Shown here: piece after piece, positions 6,906 to 58,841 of the stretch
Position numbering within the stretch: the stretch's first letter is position 1
Layout of the letters: each line of letters begins with the position of its first letter
Virus record (IMG/VR): IMGVR_UViG_3300032236_002285
Span: 248,001 to 312,000 of that record
Length of the DNA stretch: 64,000 bases
Strand: one strand, 5' to 3'
Position numbers and translations under genes: made by a program
Notes under the pieces: model-generated
Told to the model about the DNA's origin: nothing
Seen by the model: the letters and a program-made list of their open reading frames with translations, nothing else
Databases searched by the model: none

Positions 6906-6937
6906 AAAAAGAGGAAGTTAAAAACTTCCTCTTTTTT
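6906..6937. terminator. bidirectional intrinsic terminator
   Basis: AAAAAGAGGAAGT-taaaa-ACTTCCTCTTTTT. Confidence 0.8.
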
Positions 6938-7271
6938 ATCTTATTAAAGTAACATAACCTTTTTGAGCCATCATAGTTCCATCACAATCATATGTGATAT
7001 ACCAGTTATAAATTCCTAAATCTTGAACAACTCCATTAAAAGTTCCATCCCATCTTTTATCATTTAATTGAGATTCAAAAACGGTTTGACCCCATTTATT
7101 TTTAATTATAAAATTTAATATTTTATAATGATTACCAATTGGTCCAAAGGAATCGTTTTTACCATCATTATTTGGTGTAAAAGCGGATGGTAATGATAAA
7201 ACACAAGATTGAGATCTACCTAAATTAATAACACCTATTAAAAGCGCTATCATAAGCAATGTTTTTTTCAT
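6936..7271 (-). CDS. stand-alone T9SS type-B C-terminal domain with signal peptide
   Basis: Signal peptide followed directly by LPSAFTPNNDGKNDSF..NKWGQTVF..WDGTFNG..GIYNW..GYVTLIR. Confidence 0.85.
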   Translation of the reverse strand: MKKTLLMIALLIGVINLGRSQSCVLSLPSAFTPNNDGKNDSFGPIGNHYKILNFIIKNKWGQTVFESQLNDKRWDGTFNGVVQDLGIYNWYITYDCDGTMMAQKGYVTLIR

Positions 7272-7364
7272 AAATTATAACGTTATTTTCTTTATATATA
7301 ATACTGATAATCAAATGTTTTTATATTTTTTTAAAACAAATTAGGTTATTTAAAATAAACATCC

Positions 7365-7504
7365 TATCTTTGTATAACAAAACGAAAAAATAAATTACAA
7401 ATTAAAAAAAGATTAAAAAAGATTAAAAAAATTAGGTAGAATTAAAACTTTTTCTTAATTTTGTATAAAATAAGTCAAAAGGGACAAAAACTTTTTAATA
7501 TATA
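7365..7504 (+). promoter_or_regulatory. promoter block of tRNA operon 1: two Bacteroidota sigma70-type -7 boxes and a late motif
   Basis: TATCTTTG 7365-7372, TAATTTTG 7456-7463, TAATATATA 7496-7504; 7441-7504 closely matches 23022-23086. Confidence 0.7.
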
Positions 7505-7509
7505 CAACA

Positions 7510-7617
7510 ATGACAACAATGAATTTAAATATGAATATGAATCTAACGGTGGTGCTTAATACATTATGTATTAGACGCTCTGAGGGCTTCGTCATATCTA
7601 AACGATTTGTTGACTAA
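7510..7617 (+). CDS. attenuator leader peptide 1, MTTMNLNMNMNLTVVLNTLCIRRSEGFVISKRFVD
   Basis: ATG 5 nt after the late motif; TAA at 7615-7617; overlaps the antiterminator strand 7579-7591. Confidence 0.7.
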   Translation: MTTMNLNMNMNLTVVLNTLCIRRSEGFVISKRFVD

Positions 7618-7649
7618 ATGTATAACAAATTTTATAAAGGATAAAATCG

Positions 7650-7682
7650 AAACCCTCAGACAAAAAATCTGAGGGTTTTTTT
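7650..7682 (+). terminator. attenuator terminator upstream of tRNA array 1
   Basis: AAACCCTCAGA-caaaaaa-TCTGAGGGTTT plus T-run; 5' arm can instead pair with 7579-7591 (12 of 13 bp). Confidence 0.85.
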
Positions 7683-7697
7683 ATATGTAATAAATTT

Positions 7698-7769
7698 GGG
7701 GTGGTAGCTTAATGGTGAAGCAATCGGCTGTTAACCGATAGATTATAGGTTCGAATCCTATCCACCCCG
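7698..7769 (+). tRNA. tRNA-Asn(GTT)
   Basis: GGGGTGG/CCACCCC acceptor; ATCGG-CTGTTAA-CCGAT; TTCGAAT T-loop. Confidence 0.9.
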
Positions 7770-7780
7770 CAAAAATAAAC

Positions 7781-7865
7781 TGGTAGGTACCCGAGCGGTC
7801 TTCAGGGACTAGTCTGATATACTAGGTGAGAAATCACGACGTGGGTTCAAATCCCACCCTACCAA
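7781..7865 (+). tRNA. tRNA-Ile(GAT) with long variable arm
   Basis: TGGTAGG/CCTACCA; CTAGT-CTGATAT-ACTAG; variable hairpin GTGA-GAAA-TCAC. Confidence 0.8.
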
Positions 7866-7871
7866 CAACAT

Positions 7872-7943
7872 TCACTGGTAGCTCAGAGGCAGAGCAACCG
7901 CCTGTTAAGCGGTAGGTCGGGATATCGTAATTCACCCAGTGAG
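7872..7943 (+). tRNA. tRNA-Asn(GTT), irregular T-arm
   Basis: TCACTGG/CCAGTGA, G73; CCGC-CTGTTAA-GCGG; T-stem poorly paired. Confidence 0.75.
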
Positions 7944-7949
7944 CAAAAC

Positions 7950-8028
7950 GCCTCAGTAGCCGAGGTCGCCTTCTAAGCGACTAATCGTAACGGAACTGAA
8001 AATGTAGGTTCGAATCCTACCTGGGGTA
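7950..8028 (+). tRNA. atypical tRNA-Arg(TCT): D-arm nearly absent, long variable region
   Basis: GCCTCAG/CTGGGGT; GTCGC-CTTCTAA-GCGAC; GTAGG-TTCGAAT-CCTAC. Confidence 0.65.
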
Positions 8029-8083
8029 CAAAAAAAAGGGACACTAGTCTTATTAATATATAAGTAAAATGTAGGTTTGTATT

Positions 8084-8914
8084 ATGTTAGACTTTGAAAA
8101 TATTCAAAAAGACTTTGAAAGTGGTCTTTTTTATCAAAAAGATATACTAATTAAGTATAGTATATCAATTAAAAAATTAAGAACTTTTGTAAAAAAAGGT
8201 TTATTGAATAAAGAAAATTGGAAATTAAAAAAATATGAAGTAAAAAGAGAAACAAAAAAGTTAATATCAGAAGGTAGAAAAAAATGGTTGAAAGAAAATA
8301 CATCTAAACATCCTTGGAGAAATGGAAATAAATCTAAGCCTTGTGAGGAGTTTAAGAAATTCTTAAAAAGTAGGAATATTTTCTTTTTGGAAGAGGTTAT
8401 GATTTCAAAAGAAAGATTCTATTCGGTTGATATTTTAATACCTGAGTTCACTTCGGTTGTAGAAATTAATGGTAATCAACATTATAAATCTAATGGAGAA
8501 CTTAAAGATTACTATAGTGAAAGAAATAGTTTTATAAAAAATAAAGGATGGTCGATATATGAAGTACACTACTCAATTGTTTATAATTTAGAAATGTGTG
8601 ATTCTATTTTAGAAAATATTAAAAATAATAATAAAATCGATATACCATTTTATATAAAAAATAAGAAAGAAAAAAAATATAAGAATAGGGAAGAGTACTG
8701 GAATAAAAGAAAAATTAATAAATTGAATAGTTATAGTGAAAGATTAAATGAATTAAAAAACAGTAGTATAGATTTTAAAAAGATTGGATGGGTTAAACTA
8801 GCATCTGAGATATTAAAAGTTAAAAATGTAAATAAACTATTAAAAGAAATCGATCCAGAATTTTATAAAAATTGTTATAAAAGAAAACAAAATGCCGAGG
8901 TGGTGGAATGGTAG
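8084..8914 (+). CDS. DUF559/Vsr-like PD-(D/E)XK homing endonuclease inserted in tRNA array
   Basis: FYSVDILIP..VVEINGNQHY..RNSFI..GWSIYEVHY; Lys-rich; last 21 nt overlap tRNA-Leu. Confidence 0.7.
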   Translation: MLDFENIQKDFESGLFYQKDILIKYSISIKKLRTFVKKGLLNKENWKLKKYEVKRETKKLISEGRKKWLKENTSKHPWRNGNKSKPCEEFKKFLKSRNIFFLEEVMISKERFYSVDILIPEFTSVVEINGNQHYKSNGELKDYYSERNSFIKNKGWSIYEVHYSIVYNLEMCDSILENIKNNNKIDIPFYIKNKKEKKYKNREEYWNKRKINKLNSYSERLNELKNSSIDFKKIGWVKLASEILKVKNVNKLLKEIDPEFYKNCYKRKQNAEVVEW

Positions 8915-8976
8915 ACACGCTAGCCTTAGAAGCTAGTACCCGCAAGGGTGTGTGGGTTCGAGTCCCACCCTCGGTA
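8894..8976 (+). tRNA. tRNA-Leu(TAG)
   Basis: GCCGAGG/CCTCGGT; CTAGC-CTTAGAA-GCTAG; type II variable arm. Confidence 0.9.
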
Positions 8977-9001
8977 CTGAAGTGAAACGAAAGTTCACTA
9001 C
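8977..9001 (+). repeat. 25-nt tRNA-Leu 3' trailer, copy 1
   Basis: CTGAAGTGAAACGAAAGTTCACTAC, identical to 9810-9834; GAAA-capped hairpin. Confidence 0.9.
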
Positions 9002-9010
9002 AAAAAAAAT

Positions 9011-9096
9011 TGATAGGTTGCCGTAGTGGCCGAACGGTCCGGACTGTTAATCCGGTGACGAATAGTCCATCGTGGGTTCGAATCCCACCCTGTCAG
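9011..9096 (+). tRNA. tRNA-Asn(GTT) with long variable region
   Basis: TGATAGG/CCTGTCA, G73; CCGGA-CTGTTAA-TCCGG. Confidence 0.8.
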
Positions 9097-9103
9097 CAAA
9101 TAT

Positions 9104-9175
9104 AGTCCTGTAGCTTAATGGGAAAGCGCTTGCCTTACATGCAAGAGAGAGTCGGATCGTTACCGACCAGGACTA
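9104..9175 (+). tRNA. tRNA-Val(TAC)
   Basis: AGTCCTG/CAGGACT; CTTGC-CTTACAT-GCAAG; T-loop ATCGTTA. Confidence 0.85.
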
Positions 9176-9181
9176 CAAAAT

Positions 9182-9255
9182 TGGACTGTAGCTCATTTGG
9201 TTAGAGCGCCACGCTGATACCGTGGAGGTGGTCGGATCGTAACCGACCAGTCCAA
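9182..9255 (+). tRNA. tRNA-Ile(GAT)
   Basis: TGGACTG/CAGTCCA; CCACG-CTGATAC-CGTGG; T-loop ATCGTAA. Confidence 0.85.
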
Positions 9256-9261
9256 CAACAA

Positions 9262-9345
9262 GGTACTATGGCCGAGTGGAGTCTTTAAGACGGGAGGCAG
9301 TGGTCTGCAAAACTTCTCACACTGGTTCGAATCCAGTTAGTACCT
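9262..9345 (+). tRNA. tRNA-Cys(GCA) with expanded D-loop
   Basis: GGTACTA/TAGTACC, U73; loop CTGCAAA; extra GTCT-TTA-AGAC hairpin in the D-loop. Confidence 0.75.
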
Positions 9346-9350
9346 CAAAC

Positions 9351-9422
9351 GCTTCTTAAGCATTAATGGTGATGCACTAGTCTTGTAAACTAGAGAAATC
9401 GGATCGTTACCGGTAAGAAGCT
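9351..9422 (+). tRNA. tRNA-Thr(TGT)
   Basis: GCTTCTT/AAGAAGC; CTAGT-CTTGTAA-ACTAG. Confidence 0.85.
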
Positions 9423-9428
9423 CTAAAT

Positions 9429-9500
9429 TGTTCTGTAGCTCAATGGTAGAGCGCTTCTGTGACATGGAAGAGGTAGTCGGATCGTTACCGACCAGGACAA
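9429..9500 (+). tRNA. tRNA-Val(GAC)
   Basis: TGTTCTG/CAGGACA; CTTCT-GTGACAT-GGAAG. Confidence 0.8.
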
Positions 9501-9525
9501 CAAAATAATGGATGGTGATTAAGAG

Positions 9526-9598
9526 TGTTACTTCGTGAAATGGTATACACATTTGTCTTAAAAACAAACTTTTGAGGGTTCAAGTCCCTCAGTAAAAT
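9526..9598 (+). tRNA. degenerate tRNA-Leu(TAA)-like element lacking the variable arm
   Basis: Leu-type D-arm GTGAAATGGTATACAC; TTTGT-CTTAAAA-ACAAA; GAGGG-TTCAAGT-CCCTC; acceptor stem has a mismatch. Confidence 0.55.
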
Positions 9599-9625
9599 CA
9601 CTCTTTGAACTTTCCTCCATTATAT

Positions 9626-9709
9626 GCCGATGTGGCTCAGTGGCGACAGCACTGGTTTTGTAAACCAGAGACGAATAGTCCAACGGGGGTTCGAGTCCCT
9701 CCATCGGCT
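9626..9709 (+). tRNA. tRNA-Thr(TGT) with long variable region
   Basis: GCCGATG/CATCGGC; CTGGT-TTTGTAA-ACCAG. Confidence 0.85.
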
Positions 9710-9724
9710 CAAAATAAATCACCT

Positions 9725-9809
9725 GCCTGGGTGGTGGAACGGTAGACACGCTGGACTTAAAATCCAGTGGGCAGTAATGCCCGTGAGGGTTCGAGTCCCT
9801 CTCCAGGTA
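9725..9809 (+). tRNA. tRNA-Leu(TAA)
   Basis: GCCTGGG/TCCAGGT; CTGGA-CTTAAAA-TCCAG; type II arm. Confidence 0.9.
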
Positions 9810-9834
9810 CTGAAGTGAAACGAAAGTTCACTAC
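9810..9834 (+). repeat. 25-nt tRNA-Leu 3' trailer, copy 2
   Basis: Identical to 8977-9001. Confidence 0.9.
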
Positions 9835-9840
9835 TAAATT

Positions 9841-9911
9841 ATTGGGATAGTTTAATGGTAAATCGTGGGCCTGATATGCCCGTGTTCTTGGTTCGATTCC
9901 AGGTCTCAATA
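9841..9911 (+). tRNA. tRNA-Ile(GAT)
   Basis: ATTGGGA/TCTCAAT; TGGGC-CTGATAT-GCCCG. Confidence 0.8.
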
Positions 9912-9916
9912 CAAAC

Positions 9917-9988
9917 TTCGATATGGCCTATTGGTAGGGTGCAGGGGGACATGTTCCTGAGGACTTGGTTCGATTCCAGGTATCGATA
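9917..9988 (+). tRNA. tRNA-like element, anticodon undetermined (8-nt loop GGACATGT)
   Basis: Acceptor, D- and T-arms present (CTTGG-TTCGATT-CCAGG); non-canonical anticodon loop. Confidence 0.5.
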
Positions 9989-9995
9989 CAAACAT

Positions 9996-10082
9996 CGCGG
10001 GGTAGAGTAGAGGTCAAACTCACTGGGCTCATAACCCAGGGTTGCGCAAGTGACACGTCAGGTTCGAATCCTGCCCCCGCTA
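9996..10082 (+). tRNA. initiator-type tRNA-Met(CAT) with long variable arm
   Basis: Unpaired C1:U72; three consecutive G-C pairs in CTGGG-CTCATAA-CCCAG; extra GTTGC-GCAA-GTGAC hairpin. Confidence 0.8.
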
Positions 10083-10088
10083 CAACAA

Positions 10089-10161
10089 GCAGTCATCGTA
10101 TAGTAGGTGATTACACCACCTTGGTACGGTGGAGATTCCGGTTCGAATCCGGGTGATTGCT
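10089..10161 (+). tRNA. tRNA-Thr(GGT)
   Basis: GCAGTCA/TGATTGC; CCACC-TTGGTAC-GGTGG. Confidence 0.85.
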
Positions 10162-10166
10162 CAAAT

Positions 10167-10247
10167 GCCCAGATGGTGGAATGGTATACACGCCAGTCTA
10201 AGAAGCTGGTTCCTTCGGGATTGAGAGTTCGAGTCTCTCTCTGGGCA
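10167..10247 (+). tRNA. tRNA-Leu(AAG)
   Basis: GCCCAGA/TCTGGGC; CCAGT-CTAAGAA-GCTGG; Leu-type D-arm and variable arm. Confidence 0.85.
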
Positions 10248-10255
10248 CAACATAC

Positions 10256-10340
10256 GCCGGTGTGATCCGATGTGGTAATGGAGTTCGGCTCATATCCGAA
10301 TTGGTTTATCCTATTGCTGGTTCGACTCCAGCCACCGGTA
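10256..10340 (+). tRNA. tRNA-CAT (elongator Met or lysidine Ile2), long variable region
   Basis: GCCGGTG/CACCGGT; TTCGG-CTCATAT-CCGAA. Confidence 0.75.
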
Positions 10341-10345
10341 CAAAT

Positions 10346-10426
10346 GTCAGAATGGTGGAATGGTATACACGCTAGTTTCAAAAACTAGTGCCGAAAGGTA
10401 TGAGAGTTCAAATCTCTCTTCTGATA
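10346..10426 (+). tRNA. tRNA-Leu(CAA)
   Basis: GTCAGAA/TTCTGAT; CTAGT-TTCAAAA-ACTAG. Confidence 0.88.
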
Positions 10427-10448
10427 CTCGATAAAATAAAAAATAAAA

Positions 10449-10730
10449 ATGGAAAAGATTATCGACATCGTTAGAGATAACGTTGCAAGATTCGACTGGG
10501 CTTCTGAAGGAGTCCTCTACTACAAAGTAGAAACTGAAAAATATATCTATCACTTCCCAGTAGATATGAATAACAAAGAAGATGTGGGAACAGCTAATTT
10601 TGAATCAGAACATAAGGCTATAAATCTTATGAGATATTTAAGAAAAGCATCAGAAAACTTAGAAAAAATTAAAAACGATTCAGGTACGCCTGATTGGAAA
10701 AAGACATTAAGAGTTACACAAAAAGTATGA
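10449..10730 (+). CDS. hypothetical phage protein
   Basis: 93-aa ORF; its TGA overlaps the LeuRS ATG (ATGA). Confidence 0.6.
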   Translation: MEKIIDIVRDNVARFDWASEGVLYYKVETEKYIYHFPVDMNNKEDVGTANFESEHKAINLMRYLRKASENLEKIKNDSGTPDWKKTLRVTQKV

Positions 10731-11992
10731 AAGATGAAAAGTATATATGCGTTATGTTTCCTTACCCAAGTGGTTCGGGATTGCATGTAGGTCACTTTTA
10801 TAATTATGCTATAATTGATTCTTATTGTAGATACTTTAAATACAAAGGTCAACAAGTTTTTCAACCTTTTGGTTATGATGCCTTTGGTTTGCCGGCTGAA
10901 AACTATGCTAGAAAAGTAGGTCGTGATGCTAAAGATGTTACCTATGAAAACATCAGTCAATTTAGAAAACAGATGGAAAAGATGGATACCAACTATCAAG
11001 AAATGTTGGTAACATCTGATCCTTCTTATCAAAAATGGACACAATGGTTGTTTTTGAAATTGAAAGAACATGGCTTGGCTTATAAAAAAGATGGTGAAGT
11101 AAATTGGTGTCCTTCTTGTGAAACCGTATTGGCTCGTGAACAAGTTAAATCTGATTGTTGTGAAAGATGTTCAACTAAGGTAGAAATGAAAACAATGAAT
11201 CAGTGGTACTTTAAGATTACTGATTATAAAGAACGTTTGATTAAAAACTTGGATTGGATAGATTATCCAAAATCAACTATTAACGCGCAAAGAATGTGGT
11301 TGGAAAACTTGCACGATTGGTGTGTTTCTCGTCAAAGAAAATGGGGCTGTCCAATTCCAATAGAAGGTGAAACCGATACAATGGATACATTTGTAGATTC
11401 TTCATTTTACTATGTTAGATATTGTGATGCTACTAATGATAATGAATTGTGTGCTAAAGATAAATATAAACAAGTAGATGTTTATGTTGGTGGTAATGAA
11501 CACGCTTGTATGCACTTGATTTATGCTCGTTTTATTAATATGTTTTTGTATGATATTGGTGTTGTTTCAGAGGAAGAACCATTTAAGAAAGTTATACATC
11601 AAGGTATAATTTTGAACGAAGGTGAAAAAATGTCTAAAACAAAAGGTAATGTTATTAATCCAGATGATTATGACTCTGATGAATTGAGATTTTATATGAT
11701 GTTTATTGGTCATTATTTTGATGGTGGTTCTTGGTCTGACCAAAATATAGCTGGTATTAAAAGATTTATTAGTCGTTTTAAGGAGTGGATGTCAAGAGAA
11801 GGTTCTGATACTTTTGATATTGAATCATTTAAGAAAAAAATATTTAACTACACTGAGAGTTTTAAGTTTAATAAAGTTGTTAGTGAGTTTATGACAATAG
11901 TTAATCAAAATAGAACTAAAAACATAACACCTGAGATAAAAAAAGAATTGATTGAATTGATTAAGGTGTATATGCCTGGAATTAAAATTTAA
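10727..11992 (+). CDS. leuS: minimal leucyl-tRNA synthetase lacking the CP1 editing domain
   Basis: MFPYPSGSGLHVGH (HIGH), FGYDAFGLPAENYA, DWCVSRQRKWG, ETDTMDTFVDSSFYY, EKMSKTKGN; about 421 aa; start moved to ATG 10727. Confidence 0.9.
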   Translation: MKDEKYICVMFPYPSGSGLHVGHFYNYAIIDSYCRYFKYKGQQVFQPFGYDAFGLPAENYARKVGRDAKDVTYENISQFRKQMEKMDTNYQEMLVTSDPSYQKWTQWLFLKLKEHGLAYKKDGEVNWCPSCETVLAREQVKSDCCERCSTKVEMKTMNQWYFKITDYKERLIKNLDWIDYPKSTINAQRMWLENLHDWCVSRQRKWGCPIPIEGETDTMDTFVDSSFYYVRYCDATNDNELCAKDKYKQVDVYVGGNEHACMHLIYARFINMFLYDIGVVSEEEPFKKVIHQGIILNEGEKMSKTKGNVINPDDYDSDELRFYMMFIGHYFDGGSWSDQNIAGIKRFISRFKEWMSREGSDTFDIESFKKKIFNYTESFKFNKVVSEFMTIVNQNRTKNITPEIKKELIELIKVYMPGIKI

Positions 11993-11995
11993 ATT

Positions 11996-12024
11996 AAAAA
12001 AGTCCTCTATTTTAGAGGACTTTT
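11996..12024. terminator. bidirectional intrinsic terminator
   Basis: AAAAGTCCTCT-atttt-AGAGGACTTTT. Confidence 0.75.
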
Positions 12025-22576: not shown

Positions 22577-22951
22577 ATGAAATATTTACAAACAATAAAC
22601 GAATATCAAAGAACTGTAGGTTTTAGATATTCTGAACCAAAAGAAAAATATAAAGTATCTTTATTATGTAAAGGTCAAGATATCAATGAAGATAAGATAA
22701 ATGAAGGTTTATCAAAAGTTAGTGAATTGACTTATGACTCAAAGTCTATTGAAGTAAATTTACTTGATGAAGGTATGATTGCTGAACTACCAGAAATTGG
22801 ATCTGTAGAGATTAGCGCAATTGTTAGTTTTAATGTAACTCTTTACAATGAGAAAGAAGTAAATGGTGTTGTTAGTGAATTAGGTCAAAAGTTATCAAAA
22901 TTTGATATTGAAATATTAGATTTTAAATCAAAAGAAAATTTGGAAGATTAA
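22577..22951 (+). CDS. hypothetical protein, MKYLQTINEY tag family
   Basis: Late motif at 22564-22572; N-terminal tag. Confidence 0.6.
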   Translation: MKYLQTINEYQRTVGFRYSEPKEKYKVSLLCKGQDINEDKINEGLSKVSELTYDSKSIEVNLLDEGMIAELPEIGSVEISAIVSFNVTLYNEKEVNGVVSELGQKLSKFDIEILDFKSKENLED

Positions 22952-23086
22952 AATATTATTTCTATCTTTGTATTCACAAAACAAAAAAGAATTAAAAAAA
23001 AATTAAAAAAATATTTGACAAATTAAAACTTTGTTGTATATTTGTATAAAATAAGAACAAAAGGAACAAAAACTTTTTAATATATA
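22939..23086 (+). promoter_or_regulatory. promoter block of tRNA operon 2: two sigma70-type promoters and a late motif
   Basis: TTTG22939/TATCTTTG22963; TTTG23014/TATATTTG23037; TAATATATA 23078-23086; homologous to 7441-7504. Confidence 0.75.
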
Positions 23087-23091
23087 CAGAA

Positions 23092-23190
23092 ATGAAAAAC
23101 TTAAACTTAAATATCGTTAACCCTCAACCGCAAGTTGTAATCGATCAGGATCCTGGTTCGAAAGGGGCTAACTATGTGGTTTTAAGTTAA
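23092..23190 (+). CDS. attenuator leader peptide 2, MKNLNLNIVNPQPQVVIDQDPGSKGANYVVLS
   Basis: ATG 5 nt after the late motif; TAA at 23188-23190; Pro/Gln/Asp-rich core. Confidence 0.6.
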   Translation: MKNLNLNIVNPQPQVVIDQDPGSKGANYVVLS

Positions 23191-23213
23191 AGATATTATA
23201 ACTATGAAACATT

Positions 23214-23246
23214 ACCCAGTTAGTCGAAAGATTAACTGGGTTTTTT
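23214..23246 (+). terminator. attenuator terminator upstream of the Asp/Pro tRNA block
   Basis: ACCCAGTTAGTC-gaaa-GATTAACTGGGT plus T-run; 23166-23173 GGCTAACT can pair with 23218-23225. Confidence 0.85.
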
Positions 23247-23257
23247 GTTTTAGATAC

Positions 23258-23329
23258 AGTCCGTGGGTATGTTGGTATGAATAACCTCCTGTCACGGGGA
23301 AGAAGCCGGTTCGATTCCGGTACGGACTG
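23258..23329 (+). tRNA. tRNA-Asp(GTC)
   Basis: AGTCCGT/ACGGACT, G73; loop CTGTCAC. Confidence 0.85.
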
Positions 23330-23334
23330 CAAAA

Positions 23335-23408
23335 CGAGAAGTGACTAAGGTTTTAAGCACGCGCCGTCTGGAGCGGTGAGTTAGCAGGTTCGATTCCTGT
23401 CTTCTCGA
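23335..23408 (+). tRNA. tRNA-Pro(TGG)-like with atypical anticodon loop
   Basis: C1:G72 and A73 (CGAGAAG/CTTCTCG-A); CGCCG-TCTGGAG-CGGTG has C33 and A37. Confidence 0.6.
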
Positions 23409-23471
23409 CAACAAGTAGCTTTTGAGGCGAAAAATACTCTTTAGAGAATAGAGTAAAACAATTCTCAAAAT

Positions 23472-23544
23472 GGTCTCGTGGTTGAATGGTTACAATACCA
23501 CCCTGTCACGGTGCGAGATGCCGGTTCGATTCCGGTCGAGACCG
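23472..23544 (+). tRNA. tRNA-Asp(GTC)
   Basis: GGTCTCG/CGAGACC, G73; loop CTGTCAC. Confidence 0.9.
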
Positions 23545-23549
23545 CAAAA

Positions 23550-23620
23550 GGACATATAGCTTAAAAGGAAAGAGTACCTCCAGTGGGAGGGGAGTCTTGG
23601 TTCAAGTCCAGGTATGTCCG
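23550..23620 (+). tRNA. tRNA-like element, anticodon undetermined (shortened loop)
   Basis: GGACATA/TATGTCC, G73; D- and T-arms intact; CCTCC-AGTG-GGAGG. Confidence 0.5.
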
Positions 23621-23626
23621 CAAAAA

Positions 23627-23698
23627 GGTCTATTAGGGTAGTGGTTATCCTTCCCGACTGTCTATCGGGAGACACCGGTTCGAATCCGGTATAGACCG
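23627..23698 (+). tRNA. tRNA-Asp(GTC)
   Basis: GGTCTAT/ATAGACC; CCCGA-CTGTCTA-TCGGG. Confidence 0.88.
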
Positions 23699-23745
23699 CA
23701 AATGGGCTTTTCAAGACAAAAAGTTTGTAGATTACTTAATGAAAC

Positions 23746-23820
23746 GGTCTAGTGGTGAAGTGGCTATCATATCTGCCTGTCACGCAGAAGTAGAGGGATC
23801 GAAACCCTTCTAGACCGCCA
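23746..23820 (+). tRNA. tRNA-Asp(GTC), CCA encoded
   Basis: GGTCTAG/CTAGACC-GCCA; TCTGC-CTGTCAC-GCAGA. Confidence 0.9.
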
Positions 23821-23826
23821 AAAATT

Positions 23827-23901
23827 CGGGGTGTAGCGTAGTCCGGTTATCGCGCATGCTTTGGGAGCATGAAATCGTAGGTTCGAATCCTGCCACCCCG
23901 A
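23827..23901 (+). tRNA. tRNA-Pro(TGG)
   Basis: CGGGGTG/CACCCCG-A; CATGC-TTTGGGA-GCATG. Confidence 0.92.
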
Positions 23902-23932
23902 CAAAGAAACAAAATATTAATAAATAGAAATT

Positions 23933-23986
23933 ATGAGAACAACAACACAATACCAGCAACAACAACAAATTAATCCAACGGATTGA
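23933..23986 (+). CDS. attenuator leader peptide 3, MRTTTQYQQQQQINPTD
   Basis: Six Gln codons (CAA x5, CAG x1) in 17; TGA lies inside segment 2 of a 1:2/2:3/3:4 hairpin set. Confidence 0.85.
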   Translation: MRTTTQYQQQQQINPTD

Positions 23987-24014
23987 TAACGGTATCGTAT
24001 TGTCTAAACTTTAC

Positions 24015-24048
24015 AAACCCTATTCAATCTGATTGAGTAGGGTTTTTT
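24015..24048 (+). terminator. attenuator terminator upstream of tRNA-Gln x3 and glnS
   Basis: AAACCCTATTCAA-tctga-TTGAGTAGGGTTT plus T-run, ending 2 nt before tRNA-Gln. Confidence 0.88.
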
Positions 24049-24050
24049 AT

Positions 24051-24121
24051 TGTCTGATGGTGTAGTGGTAGCACAAGGGTCTTTGATCCCCTTAGTTCAG
24101 GTCCGATTCCTGATCAGACAA
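24051..24121 (+). tRNA. tRNA-Gln(TTG)
   Basis: TGTCTGA/TCAGACA; loop CTTTGAT; T-loop TCCGATT. Confidence 0.8.
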
Positions 24122-24128
24122 CAAATAT

Positions 24129-24210
24129 TGAGGAATAGAATAATGGCAGTTCACCCGCCTTTGAAGCGGAGAGAGAAATCTCAGTGTAGGTTCGAGTCCT
24201 ACTTCCTCAA
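24129..24210 (+). tRNA. tRNA-Gln(TTG) with long variable arm
   Basis: TGAGGAA/TTCCTCA; CCGC-CTTTGAA-GCGG; GAGA-GAAA-TCTC arm. Confidence 0.82.
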
Positions 24211-24216
24211 CAAAAT

Positions 24217-24288
24217 TGCTTTATAGTATATGGGTTAACATATCTGTCTTTGAAACAGATGAACTTGGTTCGAGTCCAAGTGGAGCAA
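24217..24288 (+). tRNA. tRNA-Gln(TTG)
   Basis: TGCTTTA/TGGAGCA; TCTGT-CTTTGAA-ACAGA. Confidence 0.85.
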
Positions 24289-24306
24289 CAAAAAATAATA
24301 ACTACT

Positions 24307-25911
24307 ATGAATTTCATTGAAGAAAAAATAATTGAAAAAGGTAATCTTGATAAACTAACATTGAGATTTCCACCAGAACCAAATGGCTATTTACATATTG
24401 GTCACGCTAAATCCATTATCTTAAATTTTGGTTTAGCTGAAAAATATAATAGACCTTGTAACTTGAGATTTGATGATACTAACCCAACTACCGAAGATAC
24501 TCACTTTGTTGAGTCAATTATAAAAGATATAGAATGGTTAGGTTACAAACCCGCCAATATTTTCTATACATCTGATTATTTTGATTTTCTTTATGAATGT
24601 GCTATTACTTTAATTAAAAAAGGATTAGCTTATGTTGATGATTCAACATCAGAAGAAATTGCTAACTTAAAAGGAACACCAACTTCACCTGGTAAAGATT
24701 CACCTTATAAGTCAAGAAGTGTTGATGAAAATTTAGACCTATTTAATAGAATGAGATTAGGTGAATTTGTAGAAGGTTCTAAAATTCTTAGAGCTAATAT
24801 TGATATGACTTCTCCTAATATGATTTTAAGAGATCCAGTTCTTTATAGAATAATATCTAAGTCACACCACAGAACTGGTGATACTTGGAAGATTTATCCA
24901 ATGTATGACTTTGCTCATCCACTTTCAGATTATAAAGAAGGTATTACCGATTCTTTATGTACTTTAGAATTTGAAGTTCACAGACCTTTATATATGTGGG
25001 TTTTAGAAAATTGTGATTTAGAAAATCCGCTTCCAGAAGAAACTGAGTTTGCTCGTTTGAACATTGACTATACGGTTATGTCAAAGAGAAAATTAAAAAG
25101 ATTAGTTGAAGAAGGATTTGTAGATGGTTGGGATGATCCAAGAATGCCAACTATTTCTGGTTTAAGAAGAAGAGGTTTTACTCCAAATGCTATTAAAGAT
25201 TTTTGTGATAGAATTTCTGTTACAAGAAAAGATGGTATTGTTTCTTATTTACTTTTAGAAGAATGTTTAAGAACTGATTTGAACATAGTTACCAATAGAT
25301 TAATGGGTGTTATGGATCCAGTTAAGTTAGTTATTACTAATTGGGATAGCGGAACTGAAATGGTTGAAGTTGAAAATAATCCTGGTGATGAAAGTGCTGG
25401 TACAAGAATGATTCCTTTTAGTGGTGAACTATTTATTGAAAGAGAAGATTTCAGAGAAGAAGCTAATAATAAATTTCATAGATTGAAATTAGGTGGTGAA
25501 GTAAGATTAAAAGGCGCTTATGTTATTATGGCTAACGAAGTTATCAAAGATGAATTTGGAGAAATCACTGAGATTAGATGTACTTACGATCCTTTAACAA
25601 GATCAGGTATGTCTATTGAAAGAAAGATTAAAGGAACTATTCACTGGGTATCTGCTGAACACGGAGTTAGAATGAATGTAAATGAATATGATAGATTATT
25701 TAATGATGGATCACCAGATAAAAATGAAGATGATTTTATCAATTATATCAACCCAGATTCACTTATAATTAATGATAAGGCAATCTTTGAACCTCACGTT
25801 TTAAACGTCAAGGAACCAGTTCAAATGATGAGAAAAGGGTATTATATTTTAGATACTGATGGTAAAAGTTTCAATAAAACGGTAAGTTTAAAAGAAGGTT
25901 GGGTAGGTTAA
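24307..25911 (+). CDS. glnS: glutaminyl-tRNA synthetase
   Basis: RFPPEPNGYLHIGHAKS, RFDDTNP, IYPMYDFAH, SLCTLEF, VMSKRKL, GWDDPRMPTISGLRRRG; start moved to ATG 24307 (ORF-track start lies inside a tRNA). Confidence 0.95.
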   Translation: MNFIEEKIIEKGNLDKLTLRFPPEPNGYLHIGHAKSIILNFGLAEKYNRPCNLRFDDTNPTTEDTHFVESIIKDIEWLGYKPANIFYTSDYFDFLYECAITLIKKGLAYVDDSTSEEIANLKGTPTSPGKDSPYKSRSVDENLDLFNRMRLGEFVEGSKILRANIDMTSPNMILRDPVLYRIISKSHHRTGDTWKIYPMYDFAHPLSDYKEGITDSLCTLEFEVHRPLYMWVLENCDLENPLPEETEFARLNIDYTVMSKRKLKRLVEEGFVDGWDDPRMPTISGLRRRGFTPNAIKDFCDRISVTRKDGIVSYLLLEECLRTDLNIVTNRLMGVMDPVKLVITNWDSGTEMVEVENNPGDESAGTRMIPFSGELFIEREDFREEANNKFHRLKLGGEVRLKGAYVIMANEVIKDEFGEITEIRCTYDPLTRSGMSIERKIKGTIHWVSAEHGVRMNVNEYDRLFNDGSPDKNEDDFINYINPDSLIINDKAIFEPHVLNVKEPVQMMRKGYYILDTDGKSFNKTVSLKEGWVG

Positions 25912-58704: not shown

Positions 58705-58841
58705 ATATCTATATATATTATTTGTTGTAATCAAATTTATTTTATATCTTTGTAATGTTAATTTCTTCTTAGATAGAATTTAATTGGTGGCACAAGGACG
58801 GACTCGAACCCAGATTGTTAAACAAATTAAATTAAAGAATT

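What the first reader, a model, noticed from the sequence alone, without database searches (positions are those of the whole stretch)
7510..7682. Attenuator 1: first 23 leader codons use exactly the 8 amino acids whose tRNAs lie downstream
Seen: MTTMNLNMNMNLTVVLNTLCIRR uses only M, T, N, L, V, C, I and R. The array at 7698-10426 encodes anticodons for Asn, Ile, Arg, Leu, Val, Cys, Thr and Met only. AT-rich Lys, Phe and Tyr codons are absent from this stretch, so AT bias alone does not explain it. Codon-level matches include AGA/TCT, CTT/AAG, CTA/TAG, TTA/TAA and ACA/TGT. Leader nt 7579-7591 (TCTGAGGGCTTCG) pair at 12 of 13 positions with 7648-7660, the terminator 5' arm. Inference: a multi-input stalling sensor for the whole tRNA set.
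Basis: partly seen in the sequence, partly recalled or inferred. Interest (0 to 1): 0.92.

Follow-up and report, generated by a model that had tools for sequence, protein, structure and literature searches.

The report
Codon-matched leader attenuator gating phage tRNAs
A huge phage of Bacteroidetes places a short translated leader and a terminator in front of each block of its tRNA genes, and each leader uses the codons that block decodes, so the phage probably makes more of a tRNA set only when ribosomes run short of it, a control not previously described for tRNA genes.

Summary
ORF 7510-7617 (35 codons) uses only M, T, N, L, V, C, I and R in its first 23 codons. The downstream array (7698-10427) carries tRNAs for exactly those eight amino acids. 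Segment 7579-7591 pairs at 12 of 13 positions with 7648-7660, the 5' arm of an intrinsic terminator (7650-7682). Chance is about 4e-9, and no 23-residue window in the window's proteome matches.

Comparative data support the interpretation. I found 74 distinct homologous leaders in huge-phage contigs. Other leader classes match other arrays: P/Q/D leaders precede Asp/Pro, Q-runs precede tRNA-Gln plus GlnRS, H/K/F/S/W precede His/Lys/Phe/Trp/Ser, E/Y precede Glu/Tyr, G/A precede Gly/Ala, and S-runs precede Ser/Arg. Together the classes cover all 20 amino acids (array-swap permutation 0 of 10,000). Indels in the ORF preserve the reading frame. The antiterminator segment covaries with the terminator arm, including a complete change of stem sequence.

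The best reading is a classical ribosome-mediated attenuator applied to tRNA operons, which closes a feedback loop on tRNA supply. Codon 23 (CGC) has no matching anticodon, and the last codons (C, I, R) lie too close to the antiterminator arm to be clearly sensing positions. The direction of the response is untested. Nine literature searches found no prior description.

The parts
7365..7372 (+). Distal promoter-like box TATCTTTG (fits TAnnTTTG), followed by A-rich repeats.
   Evidence: Motif scan. The same arrangement recurs before the second array at 22963, and the two upstream regions are paralogous, 126 of 172 aligned columns identical. Assignment as a promoter is inference.
7432..7463 (+). 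Proximal Bacteroidetes-type promoter candidate. The -7 box TAATTTTG lies at 7456-7463. The -33 position reads TTAG here and TTTG in relatives.
   Evidence: The cassette is conserved in all leader classes. Of 134 loci retrieved with it, 99 carry a complete leader. The promoter consensus is from my own knowledge of Bacteroidetes sigma-A promoters and was not tested.
7478..7504 (+). Conserved 5' leader containing TTAATATATA (7495-7504), 5 nt before the ATG.
   Evidence: The same 10-mer lies mostly 14-16 nt (motif start to ATG) before the start codons of first genes of operons on both strands of the window: 16 copies, about 11 at that spacing (compared).
7510..7617 (+). Leader ORF, 35 codons plus TAA.
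   Evidence: There are 24 distinct class I homologues with frame-preserving indels, and the other two frames hold 2-8 stops.
7513..7575 (+). Regulatory codons 2-22 (T, M, N, L, V, C, I, R), each readable by an anticodon in the array.
   Evidence: Across 15 class I units, 85.5% of such codons are decodable by the unit's own array as called by ARAGORN.
7557..7573 (+). Small A/U-rich hairpin (TAATAC/GTATTA) inside the ORF, just before segment A. It may be a pause or anti-antiterminator element.
   Evidence: Folds. The columns are nearly invariant, so covariation gives no information either way. Its role is inference.
7579..7591 (+). Segment A, the 5' arm of the antiterminator, inside the ORF (codons 24-28).
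   Evidence: 12 of 13 complementary to 7648-7660. Duplex z-score -5.3. Covaries with B.
7648..7660 (+). Segment B, which pairs either with A (antiterminator) or with C (terminator).
7650..7682 (+). Intrinsic terminator: an 11-12 bp stem (7650-7660 with 7668-7678) and a T-run.
   Evidence: Terminator scan. Energy -15.3 kcal/mol. 94% of cells paired across 24 homologues.
7698..10427 (+). Regulated tRNA array of 21 tRNA genes (Asn, Ile, Arg, Leu, Val, Cys, Thr, Met), interrupted by ORF 8084-8914. The first tRNA starts 15 nt after the T-run.
10449..11992 (+). Genes co-transcribed after the array: a 93-aa ORF and a 432-aa LeuRS-like class I synthetase core (10694-11992).
   Evidence: Pfam PF00133 and PF09334. 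TIGR00396 leuS scores 399 bits, below its cutoff of 548. There is no terminator between 10427 and 10449.
11996..12024 (+). Terminator closing the transcription unit.
   Evidence: Sequence. Coordinates.
23092..23246 (+). Sister unit 2: a 32-codon leader with the core PQPQVVIDQDP, and a terminator at 23214-23246. It precedes the Asp (x4-5) and Pro tRNAs at 23258-23902.
   Evidence: Its A:B pairing is weaker (-11.6 kcal/mol, z about -1).
23933..24048 (+). Sister unit 3: a 17-codon leader carrying Q-Y-Q-Q-Q-Q-Q, and a terminator at 24015-24048. It precedes three tRNA-Gln(TTG) genes (24051-24289) and then GlnRS (24307-25911).
   Evidence: GlnRS scores 668 bits on TIGR00440 against a cutoff of 426.

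Best explanation
This is a ribosome-mediated (leader-peptide) transcription attenuator in front of a phage tRNA operon.

Transcription probably starts at a host-type promoter about 40 nt upstream of the ATG. The 35-codon leader is translated while RNA polymerase moves on. Codons 2 to about 20 sample the decoding capacities that the downstream genes supply (Asn, Thr, Met, Leu, Val, and also Cys, Ile and Arg).

If one of these codons is read slowly, the ribosome stalls upstream of segment A (7579-7591). A is then free to pair with B (7648-7660) as soon as B is made. The terminator stem B:C cannot form, and polymerase reads into the 21 tRNA genes and the LeuRS-like gene.

If decoding is fluent, the ribosome runs over A and parks at the stop codon, in the interior of the would-be antiterminator hairpin. 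B then pairs with C, and transcription ends at 7682.

Because the regulated products are the tRNAs that relieve the stall, the unit is a negative-feedback controller of tRNA supply. The phage and its relatives carry one such unit, with a differently composed leader, in front of each tRNA block.

What is shown: the architecture, its conservation, the codon-array matching and the covariation. What is inferred: translation in vivo, the direction of the response and the physiological signal.
For: 1. Observation and chance.

2. Homologues: the same leader occurs in two GenBank huge phages. In all there are 74 distinct leaders from IMG/VR and metagenome contigs.

3. Coding: 105 of 106 gap runs inside the ORF are multiples of 3, whereas gaps after the stop are of any length. 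The other two frames are closed. The ATG sits in the same TTAATATATA context as real gene starts.

4. Matching: class I leaders match their own arrays at 0.81 of residues, against 0.01-0.05 for arrays of the other classes. Array-swap permutation gave 0 of 5,000.

5. Codon level: 85.5% of class I regulatory codons are decodable by the unit's own array. Arg is split by codon family: AGA codons go with Arg-TCT arrays in class I, and CGC/CGT codons with Arg-ACG arrays in class III.

6. Unbiased scan: a search for ORF-terminator-tRNA finds further classes (Gln, Ser/Arg, Glu/Tyr, Gly/Ala/Ile, Lys/Phe). All 20 amino acids are enriched 1.3- to 39-fold in leaders whose array carries that tRNA. Permutation gave 0 of 10,000. 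Variant L102 lacks L, M and R in its leader's sensing stretch (the start codon and one Leu near the end aside), and its array lacks Leu, Met and Arg tRNAs.

7. Structure: the class I A:B duplex averages -18.5 kcal/mol against -7.5 for shuffles (median z -5.6). A:B is in the minimum-energy fold of the nascent RNA in 24 of 24 class I units, and the terminator is in the full-length fold in 24 of 24.

8. Covariation of A:B: 85% of cells pair against 25-55% when the partner is slid. Nineteen cells show changes on both sides, and 0 of 500 shuffles reach the covariation score. In three homologues the stem changes from CTGAGGG to GTTCGGG in A, B and C together.

9. There is no room for a promoter between the T-run and the first tRNA (15 nt).
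Against: - There are no expression data of any kind.
- The host and phage are uncultured, and the transcription start site is not mapped.
- The geometry is less clean than in trp. A ribosome at the stop codon (7615) does not itself cover A (which ends at 7591). Termination must therefore rely on the ribosome occupying the interior of the A..B hairpin (16 of 27 footprint nt are paired there) and on the faster folding of the local B:C hairpin.
- The interior helices are barely better than shuffles (z about -1).
- Stalls at codons 21-22 would cover 4-7 nt of A, so those codons may not act as positive inputs.
- Without any translation the nascent fold favours A:B, giving read-through, unlike trp superattenuation.
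- Class II antiterminators are weak (z -1.3). Only 14 of 34 class III units show A:B in the nascent minimum-energy fold.
- The N-terminal N/T-rich codons are shared by all classes, including ones whose arrays lack Asn and Thr tRNAs.
Confidence: 0.8

Rival explanations
1. The hardware is the same, but the signal is different. The leaders would report amino-acid starvation or general aminoacylation and translation status of the infected cell, not the size of the tRNA pools. The tRNA arrays would simply be switched with the host's translational state.
For: Leader-peptide attenuators respond to charged tRNA, so they cannot by themselves tell a lack of amino acid from a lack of tRNA (established for trp and his; my own knowledge). 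Synthetase genes lie in the same units: a LeuRS-like gene after array 1 and GlnRS after the Gln tRNAs.
Against: Making more tRNA does not relieve amino-acid starvation, so such a loop would not close. The leader composition tracks the tRNA content of each block in fine detail, down to Arg codon families and merged or split Glu/Tyr/Gly/Ala blocks. That is what selection for a product-matched sensor would produce.
Confidence: 0.1
2. The polarity is reversed, or the element is mainly a timing device. Stalling near the end of the sensing stretch would cover A and cause termination. Alternatively the element is a constitutive partial terminator that sets the ratio of leader transcript to array transcript, with translation only modulating it slightly.
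For: Codons 20-22 (C, I, R) lie within about 12 nt of A, so a stall there would mask part of A (geometry). A ribosome at the stop codon does not cover A. Untranslated nascent RNA already favours A:B.
Against: Most matched codons (2-19) lie where a stall leaves A free. The class-specific codon matching has no purpose in a constitutive device. A lies at the same position relative to the sensing codons in three classes that use different stem sequences.
Confidence: 0.06
3. The ORF is an independent small-protein gene with its own terminator, or a nascent-peptide arrest element of the TnaC or SecM kind. The resemblance between its composition and the array would then be coincidence or shared AT bias.
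For: The peptide stretch V-V-N-N-T-L-C-I-R is highly conserved, also at synonymous sites. Third codon positions vary no more than second positions.
Against: AT-rich Lys, Phe and Tyr codons are absent from this leader but dominate the leaders of the Lys/Phe/His and Glu/Tyr arrays. The match holds for all 20 amino acids. Segment A covaries with the terminator arm. Conservation at synonymous sites is what a codon-specific sensor and an RNA switch would both predict.
Confidence: 0.03

Closest known systems
Leader-peptide transcription attenuators of amino-acid biosynthesis operons (trpL, hisL, leuL, thrL, pheL; multivalent ilvL of ilvGMEDA)
   Same: A short translated ORF enriched in diagnostic codons. 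An intrinsic terminator before the regulated genes. An alternative antiterminator that shares the terminator's 5' arm and whose formation depends on where the ribosome is. Multi-amino-acid input, as in ilvL (Ile, Leu, Val) and thrL (Thr, Ile).
   Different: The regulated products are tRNA genes, not enzymes. Up to eight amino acids are sampled in one leader. The core has three segments, with no demonstrated 1:2 helix. The stop codon lies well downstream of A. The element is viral, in a Bacteroidetes system without Shine-Dalgarno sequences. A whole set of paralogous units covers all 20 amino acids. No Rfam leader family matches above threshold: His_leader scores 23.6 bits against a cutoff of 49, and Phe_leader 25.5 against 55.
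pheM leader of the E. coli pheST operon (attenuation control of an aminoacyl-tRNA synthetase)
   Same: Leader-peptide attenuation applied to a component of the translation apparatus for the same amino acid. The Gln-run leader before tRNA-Gln x3 plus GlnRS (23933-25911) is the nearest analogue.
   Different: Here the first regulated genes are the tRNAs themselves, and the units are phage-encoded. This comparison rests on my own knowledge of pheST. No sequence similarity was tested.
T-box riboswitches
   Same: They control translation-apparatus genes by terminator/antiterminator choice, in response to the state of a specific tRNA.
   Different: T-boxes bind uncharged tRNA directly through a specifier codon and the T-box motif, and they need no translation. 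No T-box hit appears in the window at gathering threshold or in 7300-7700 at E up to 10. Here a translated ORF carries many codons.
tRNA arrays of large phages (T4, T5, mycobacteriophages, Lak and other huge phages)
   Same: Clustered phage tRNA genes, here in relatives of the 634-kb and 642-kb Mahaphage genomes predicted to infect Bacteroidetes.
   Different: The huge-phage paper reports tRNA counts and synthetases but contains neither 'attenuat' nor 'leader'. No regulatory leader has been described for such arrays in the papers I could search.

Membership tests
Ribosome-mediated (leader-peptide) transcription attenuator | A short ORF immediately upstream that is translated. | tested here: met
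   35 codons. 105 of 106 gap runs in the ORF among 24 homologues are multiples of 3, while gaps after the stop are of any length. The other frames are closed. The start context is shared with real genes. Translation itself is inferred.
Ribosome-mediated (leader-peptide) transcription attenuator | Regulatory codons that correspond to the regulated pathway. | tested here: met
   Codons 2-22 are all readable by array anticodons. The match is class-specific across units, with permutation results of 0 of 5,000 and 0 of 10,000.
Ribosome-mediated (leader-peptide) transcription attenuator | An intrinsic terminator between the leader and the regulated genes. | tested here: met
   Hairpin plus T-run at 7650-7682. 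It is present in 67 of the 68 units with enough downstream sequence to test, out of 74 distinct leaders. 94% of cells are paired.
Ribosome-mediated (leader-peptide) transcription attenuator | A mutually exclusive antiterminator that uses the terminator's 5' arm and a segment controlled by ribosome position. | tested here: met
   A (7579-7591, inside the ORF) pairs with B at 12 of 13 positions, z -5.3. Covariation occurs at 5 pairs and includes a full stem swap. A:B is in the nascent fold in 24 of 24 class I units.
Ribosome-mediated (leader-peptide) transcription attenuator | An upstream 1:2 (pause or anti-antiterminator) helix, as in trp. | tested here: inconclusive
   A small hairpin lies at 7557-7573, but its columns are invariant. 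RNAalifold finds no conserved helix that sequesters A.
Ribosome-mediated (leader-peptide) transcription attenuator | Read-through rises when the cognate charged tRNA is limiting. | not testable with these tools
   This needs a coupled in vitro system, a reporter or transcript mapping.
Ribosome-mediated (leader-peptide) transcription attenuator | The regulated genes are amino-acid biosynthesis or synthetase genes (the scope of all described members). | tested here: not met
   The first 21 regulated genes are tRNAs. A LeuRS-like gene follows only at the end of the unit. For this reason I file it as a new variant.
T-box riboswitch (RF00230) | A specifier loop and the conserved T-box sequence, detectable by the Rfam model. 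| tested here: not met
   No hit at gathering threshold in the whole window, and none at E up to 10 in 7300-7700.
Rfam leader families (His_leader, Phe_leader, trpB motif) | A score at or above the family's gathering threshold. | tested here: not met
   trpB 30.8 bits against 59, Phe_leader 25.5 against 55, His_leader 23.6 against 49. These are sub-threshold and driven mostly by the terminator.

The most novel reading that the evidence does not exclude
These phages carry a complete, modular, codon-resolved controller of tRNA supply. Every tRNA block, together covering all 20 amino acids, sits behind its own leader-peptide attenuator written in the codons that block decodes. Each block would then be transcribed only when its own codons become slow to read. 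Causes could include the load of AT-rich phage mRNAs, or the host depleting or cleaving particular tRNAs as a defence. This would be the first case of tRNA genes under leader-peptide attenuation, and a virus-encoded closed feedback loop on the decoding capacity of the infected cell.
Probability: 0.6. Interest if true: 0.93.

Novelty: new variant of a known kind. Interest (0 to 1): 0.88.

Why it matters
Bacterial tRNA genes are known to be controlled at the promoter, by growth rate and the stringent response. Why large phages carry tRNA arrays, and when they use them, is still debated.

A leader-peptide switch in front of each array would mean the phage measures decoding speed codon by codon and tops up only the tRNAs that are short. 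That would give a direct, testable mechanism for demand-driven tRNA expression. It would also extend classical attenuation to a new class of target, to viruses and to Bacteroidetes-type systems.

The units are small and modular, and each comes as a sensor with a known codon specificity. Such parts could serve as reporters of decoding speed for chosen codons.

The leader-to-array match is also useful for annotation. A leader's composition predicts the identity of odd-shaped tRNAs downstream that standard tools miss, here the Arg and Cys genes.

Tried and rejected
- The first IMG/VR scan, with the 16-mer before the ATG, mostly returned chance hits in AT-rich DNA. It had to be filtered by script. 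A gapped promoter-cassette pattern was specific.
- The same pattern in bacterial genomes gave three chance hits with no tRNAs nearby. The cassette therefore looks phage-only, and this search gave no host clue.
- RNAalifold on the whole class I alignment recovered only a mis-registered terminator, because MAFFT split the swapped stem. I used anchored, ungapped frames and the count of structure pairs instead.
- I looked for a trp-like 1:2 helix. The window's full-length fold pairs A with codons 10-16, but this pairing is not conserved. The 7557-7573 hairpin never varies.
- I tested whether the interior of the A..B hairpin is structured. It is only marginally so (z about -1).
- I recalled that E. 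coli tRNA-Phe genes might have an attenuator-like leader. pheV in K-12 has only about 100 nt with a plain promoter upstream and no leader ORF, so I dropped that precedent.
- Nine literature searches and a term search of the huge-phage paper found no description of leaders before phage tRNA arrays. The library is incomplete, so this is not proof of novelty.

Full report
**The observation**

The ORF runs from ATG at 7510 to TAA at 7615-7617 and has 35 codons. Its first 23 residues use only M, T, N, L, V, C, I and R. The remaining twelve add S, E, G, F, K and D.

Downstream, ARAGORN tRNAs between 7698 and 10427. Rfam adds two more, at 7872-7943 (anticodon loop with GTT, Asn) and 7950-8028 (TCT, Arg). 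Region 9262-9346 is a homologue of a tRNA-Cys(GCA) with a 13-nt insertion in the D-loop.

Segment 7579-7591 is complementary at 12 of 13 positions to 7648-7660. The latter is the 5' arm of a hairpin plus T-run at 7650-7682.

The eight amino acids make up 41.4% of residues in the window's 65 long ORFs. The chance of 22 further codons staying in the set is about 4e-9. None of 16,888 proteome windows of 23 residues does so, and the longest run is 11. This ORF ranks first among 455 small ORFs.

One caveat applies. Codon 23 (CGC) is not read by the array's Arg-TCT tRNA and is variable in homologues, so the codon-level match ends at codon 22.

**Context**

The window has 30% G+C. Its only extended DNA relatives among deposited phages are two uncultured genomes of 634 and 642 kb. 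These belong to the huge-phage clade predicted to infect Bacteroidetes (PMC7162821). A CHU_C type IX secretion sorting domain in ORF 6936-7271 fits that host range.

Upstream of the leader lie a TAnnTTTG box (7456-7463) and a conserved stretch ending in TTAATATATA, 5 nt before the ATG. That 10-mer also precedes the start codons of first genes of operons on both strands of the window, mostly at the same spacing.

**Homologues and sister units**

Both GenBank relatives carry the same leader, terminator and array. A pattern built on the promoter cassette retrieved 134 loci from IMG/VR and metagenomes. Of these, 99 hold a complete leader, giving 74 distinct peptides in three classes:

- **Class I**, the one in question, precedes Asn/Ile/Arg/Leu/Val/Thr/Cys/Met arrays.
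- **Class II** has a core of P, Q and D codons and precedes Asp/Pro arrays.
- **Class III** has a core of H, K, F, S and W codons and precedes His/Phe/Lys/Trp/Arg/Ser arrays.

The window itself holds a class II unit (23092-23246) before its Asp/Pro tRNAs. It also holds a 17-codon leader with a run of Gln codons (23933-24048) before three tRNA-Gln genes and GlnRS.

A class-agnostic scan for ORF-terminator-tRNA found further classes:

- Ser-runs plus Arg codons before Ser/Arg tRNAs.
- Tyr/Glu-rich leaders before Glu/Tyr tRNAs.
- Gly/Ala/Ile-rich leaders before Ile/Gly/Ala tRNAs.
- Lys/Phe-rich leaders before Lys/Phe tRNAs.

Where blocks are merged, the leader is merged too.

**Statistics of the match**

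| Test | Result |
|---|---|
| Class I regulatory residues matched by own array | 0.81 |
| Same residues against arrays of the other classes | 0.01-0.05 |
| Swapping arrays among units | 0 of 5,000 permutations reach the observed score |
| Class I regulatory codons decodable by own array | 85.5% |
| Enrichment of each of the 20 amino acids in leaders whose array has that tRNA | 1.3- to 39-fold |
| Permutation on the unbiased set | 0 of 10,000 |

Arg is split by codon family: AGA goes with Arg-TCT arrays and CGC/CGT with Arg-ACG arrays. A divergent class I relative (L102) lacks L, M and R in its leader's sensing stretch (the start codon and one Leu near the end aside), and its array lacks Leu, Met and Arg tRNAs.

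**Evidence that the ORF is read**

In the alignment of 24 distinct class I units, 105 of 106 gap runs inside the ORF are multiples of three. After the stop codon, gaps have any length. The two other frames contain 2-8 stops.

**RNA switch**

The class I A:B duplex averages -18.5 kcal/mol, against -7.5 for dinucleotide shuffles of the ORF (median z -5.6). In 21 of 24 units no shuffle out of 200 did as well.

Folding the nascent RNA up to the terminator loop puts A:B in the minimum-energy structure in 24 of 24 class I units. The full-length RNA has the terminator in 24 of 24.

On the alignment, 85% of A:B cells pair, against 25-55% when the partner is slid by 1-3 columns. Five pairs show changes on both sides (19 cells), and no shuffle out of 500 reaches the covariation score. 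In three homologues the stem sequence CTGAGGG is replaced by GTTCGGG in A, B and C at once. The pairs just outside the terminator stem (GGGTTC:GAACCC, CTTCG:CGAAA, TTTTGA:TCAAAA) change together.

Classes II and III use other stem sequences, again mirrored in their ORFs. Class II pairing is weak (z -1.3), and only 14 of 34 class III units show A:B in the nascent fold.

**Mechanism and its weak points**

I propose the canonical logic.

- A stall at codons 2 to about 19 leaves A free. A:B then forms before C is made, and polymerase reads through.
- Fluent translation takes the ribosome over A to the stop codon, in the interior of the A..B hairpin. There 16 of its 27 footprint nucleotides would otherwise be paired. 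B is left to fold locally with C.

This step is inferred, and several points weaken it:

- The ribosome at the stop does not itself cover A.
- The interior helices are hardly better than chance.
- Stalls at codons 21-22 would mask 4-7 nt of A.
- Untranslated RNA favours read-through.
- No conserved trp-like 1:2 helix was found.
- The N-terminal M-x-T-x-N-x-N is common to all classes, so part of the Asn/Thr richness of this leader is inherited.

**What is regulated**

The first tRNA begins 15 nt after the T-run, which leaves no room for a promoter. After the array come a 93-aa ORF and a 432-aa LeuRS-like core, with no terminator in between. The unit closes at 11996-12024.

**Comparison and novelty**

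The element works like the leader-peptide attenuators of amino-acid operons and of pheST. It meets their structural criteria, but it regulates tRNA genes. No Rfam family reaches threshold. The best sub-threshold hits are the trpB motif, Phe_leader and His_leader, and there is no T-box.

E. coli pheV, which I checked as a possible precedent, has no leader. Nine literature searches and a term search of the huge-phage paper found no description of such leaders.

I rate it a new variant of a known kind, of high interest. No step had to be referred.

Noticed in passing
window 7781-7866, 9011-9097, 9626-9710, 9997-10081, 10256-10341, 7950-8028: These tRNAs have a long variable arm (79-87 nt, class II shape) but carry Ile-GAT, Asn-GTT, Thr-TGT, Met-CAT (x2) and Arg-TCT anticodons. 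The Asn and Thr copies share the arm GACGAATAGTCCA. They are conserved in relatives and are not close copies of the Leu tRNAs (at most 0.66 identity to any Leu tRNA). Which synthetase charges them is unknown.
   Followed up: partly
window 9104-9176, 9182-9256, 9351-9423, 9429-9501, 7872-7943: Several tRNAs have the T-loop ATCGTTA (or ATCGTAA) instead of TTCGAAT, which swaps the usual T54/A58 positions.
   Followed up: no
window 9262-9346: A tRNA-Cys(GCA) homologue with a 13-nt insertion in the D-loop. ARAGORN at default settings and Rfam at gathering threshold both miss it.
   Followed up: partly
window 9917-9989 (also L126): A tRNA-like gene with an 8-nt anticodon loop, called 'acat' by ARAGORN (Cys|Met). 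It is conserved in a relative and might decode a quadruplet or be an unusual Met/Ile tRNA.
   Followed up: no
window 8084-8914: A 276-aa ORF sits inside the tRNA array. It has no Pfam hit, only a weak PHROG hit of unknown function. It is preceded by its own GGGACA...TTAATATATA stretch. It may be a mobile insertion.
   Followed up: no
window 10694-11992 and 24307-25911: Synthetase genes sit at the ends of attenuator-controlled units. One is a 432-aa LeuRS-like core, about half the length of the 843-position bacterial LeuRS model (leuS model below cutoff). The other is a full GlnRS directly after three tRNA-Gln genes.
   Followed up: partly
window, 16 sites (e.g. 644, 4563, 5846, 22563; minus strand 5582, 18803, 56894, 61306): The motif TTAATATATA lies mostly 14-16 nt (motif start to ATG) before the start codon of first genes of operons on both strands. 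It could be a phage promoter giving near-leaderless mRNAs, or a translation-start signal.
   Followed up: partly
window 7340-7509 versus 22940-23091: The 170 nt upstream of the two promoter-bearing leaders are paralogous (126 of 172 columns identical). Each has a distal TATCTTTG box and A-rich GATTAAAAAA repeats. The regulatory cassettes have evidently been duplicated and their leaders rewritten.
   Followed up: partly
window 8978-9002 and 9811-9835: An identical small hairpin (AGTGAAACGAAAGTTCACT) follows two tRNA-Leu genes. It has no T-run. It may be a processing signal.
   Followed up: no
window about 58770-58800, minus strand: The plus strand reads TGGTGGCACAAGGACGGACTCGAACCC, which looks like the 3' half of a tRNA gene on the minus strand. 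ARAGORN does not call it. It could be a tRNA fragment or an interrupted gene.
   Followed up: no
window 6936-7271, minus strand: A small ORF with a CHU_C type IX secretion sorting domain, a Bacteroidetes hallmark, encoded in a phage.
   Followed up: no
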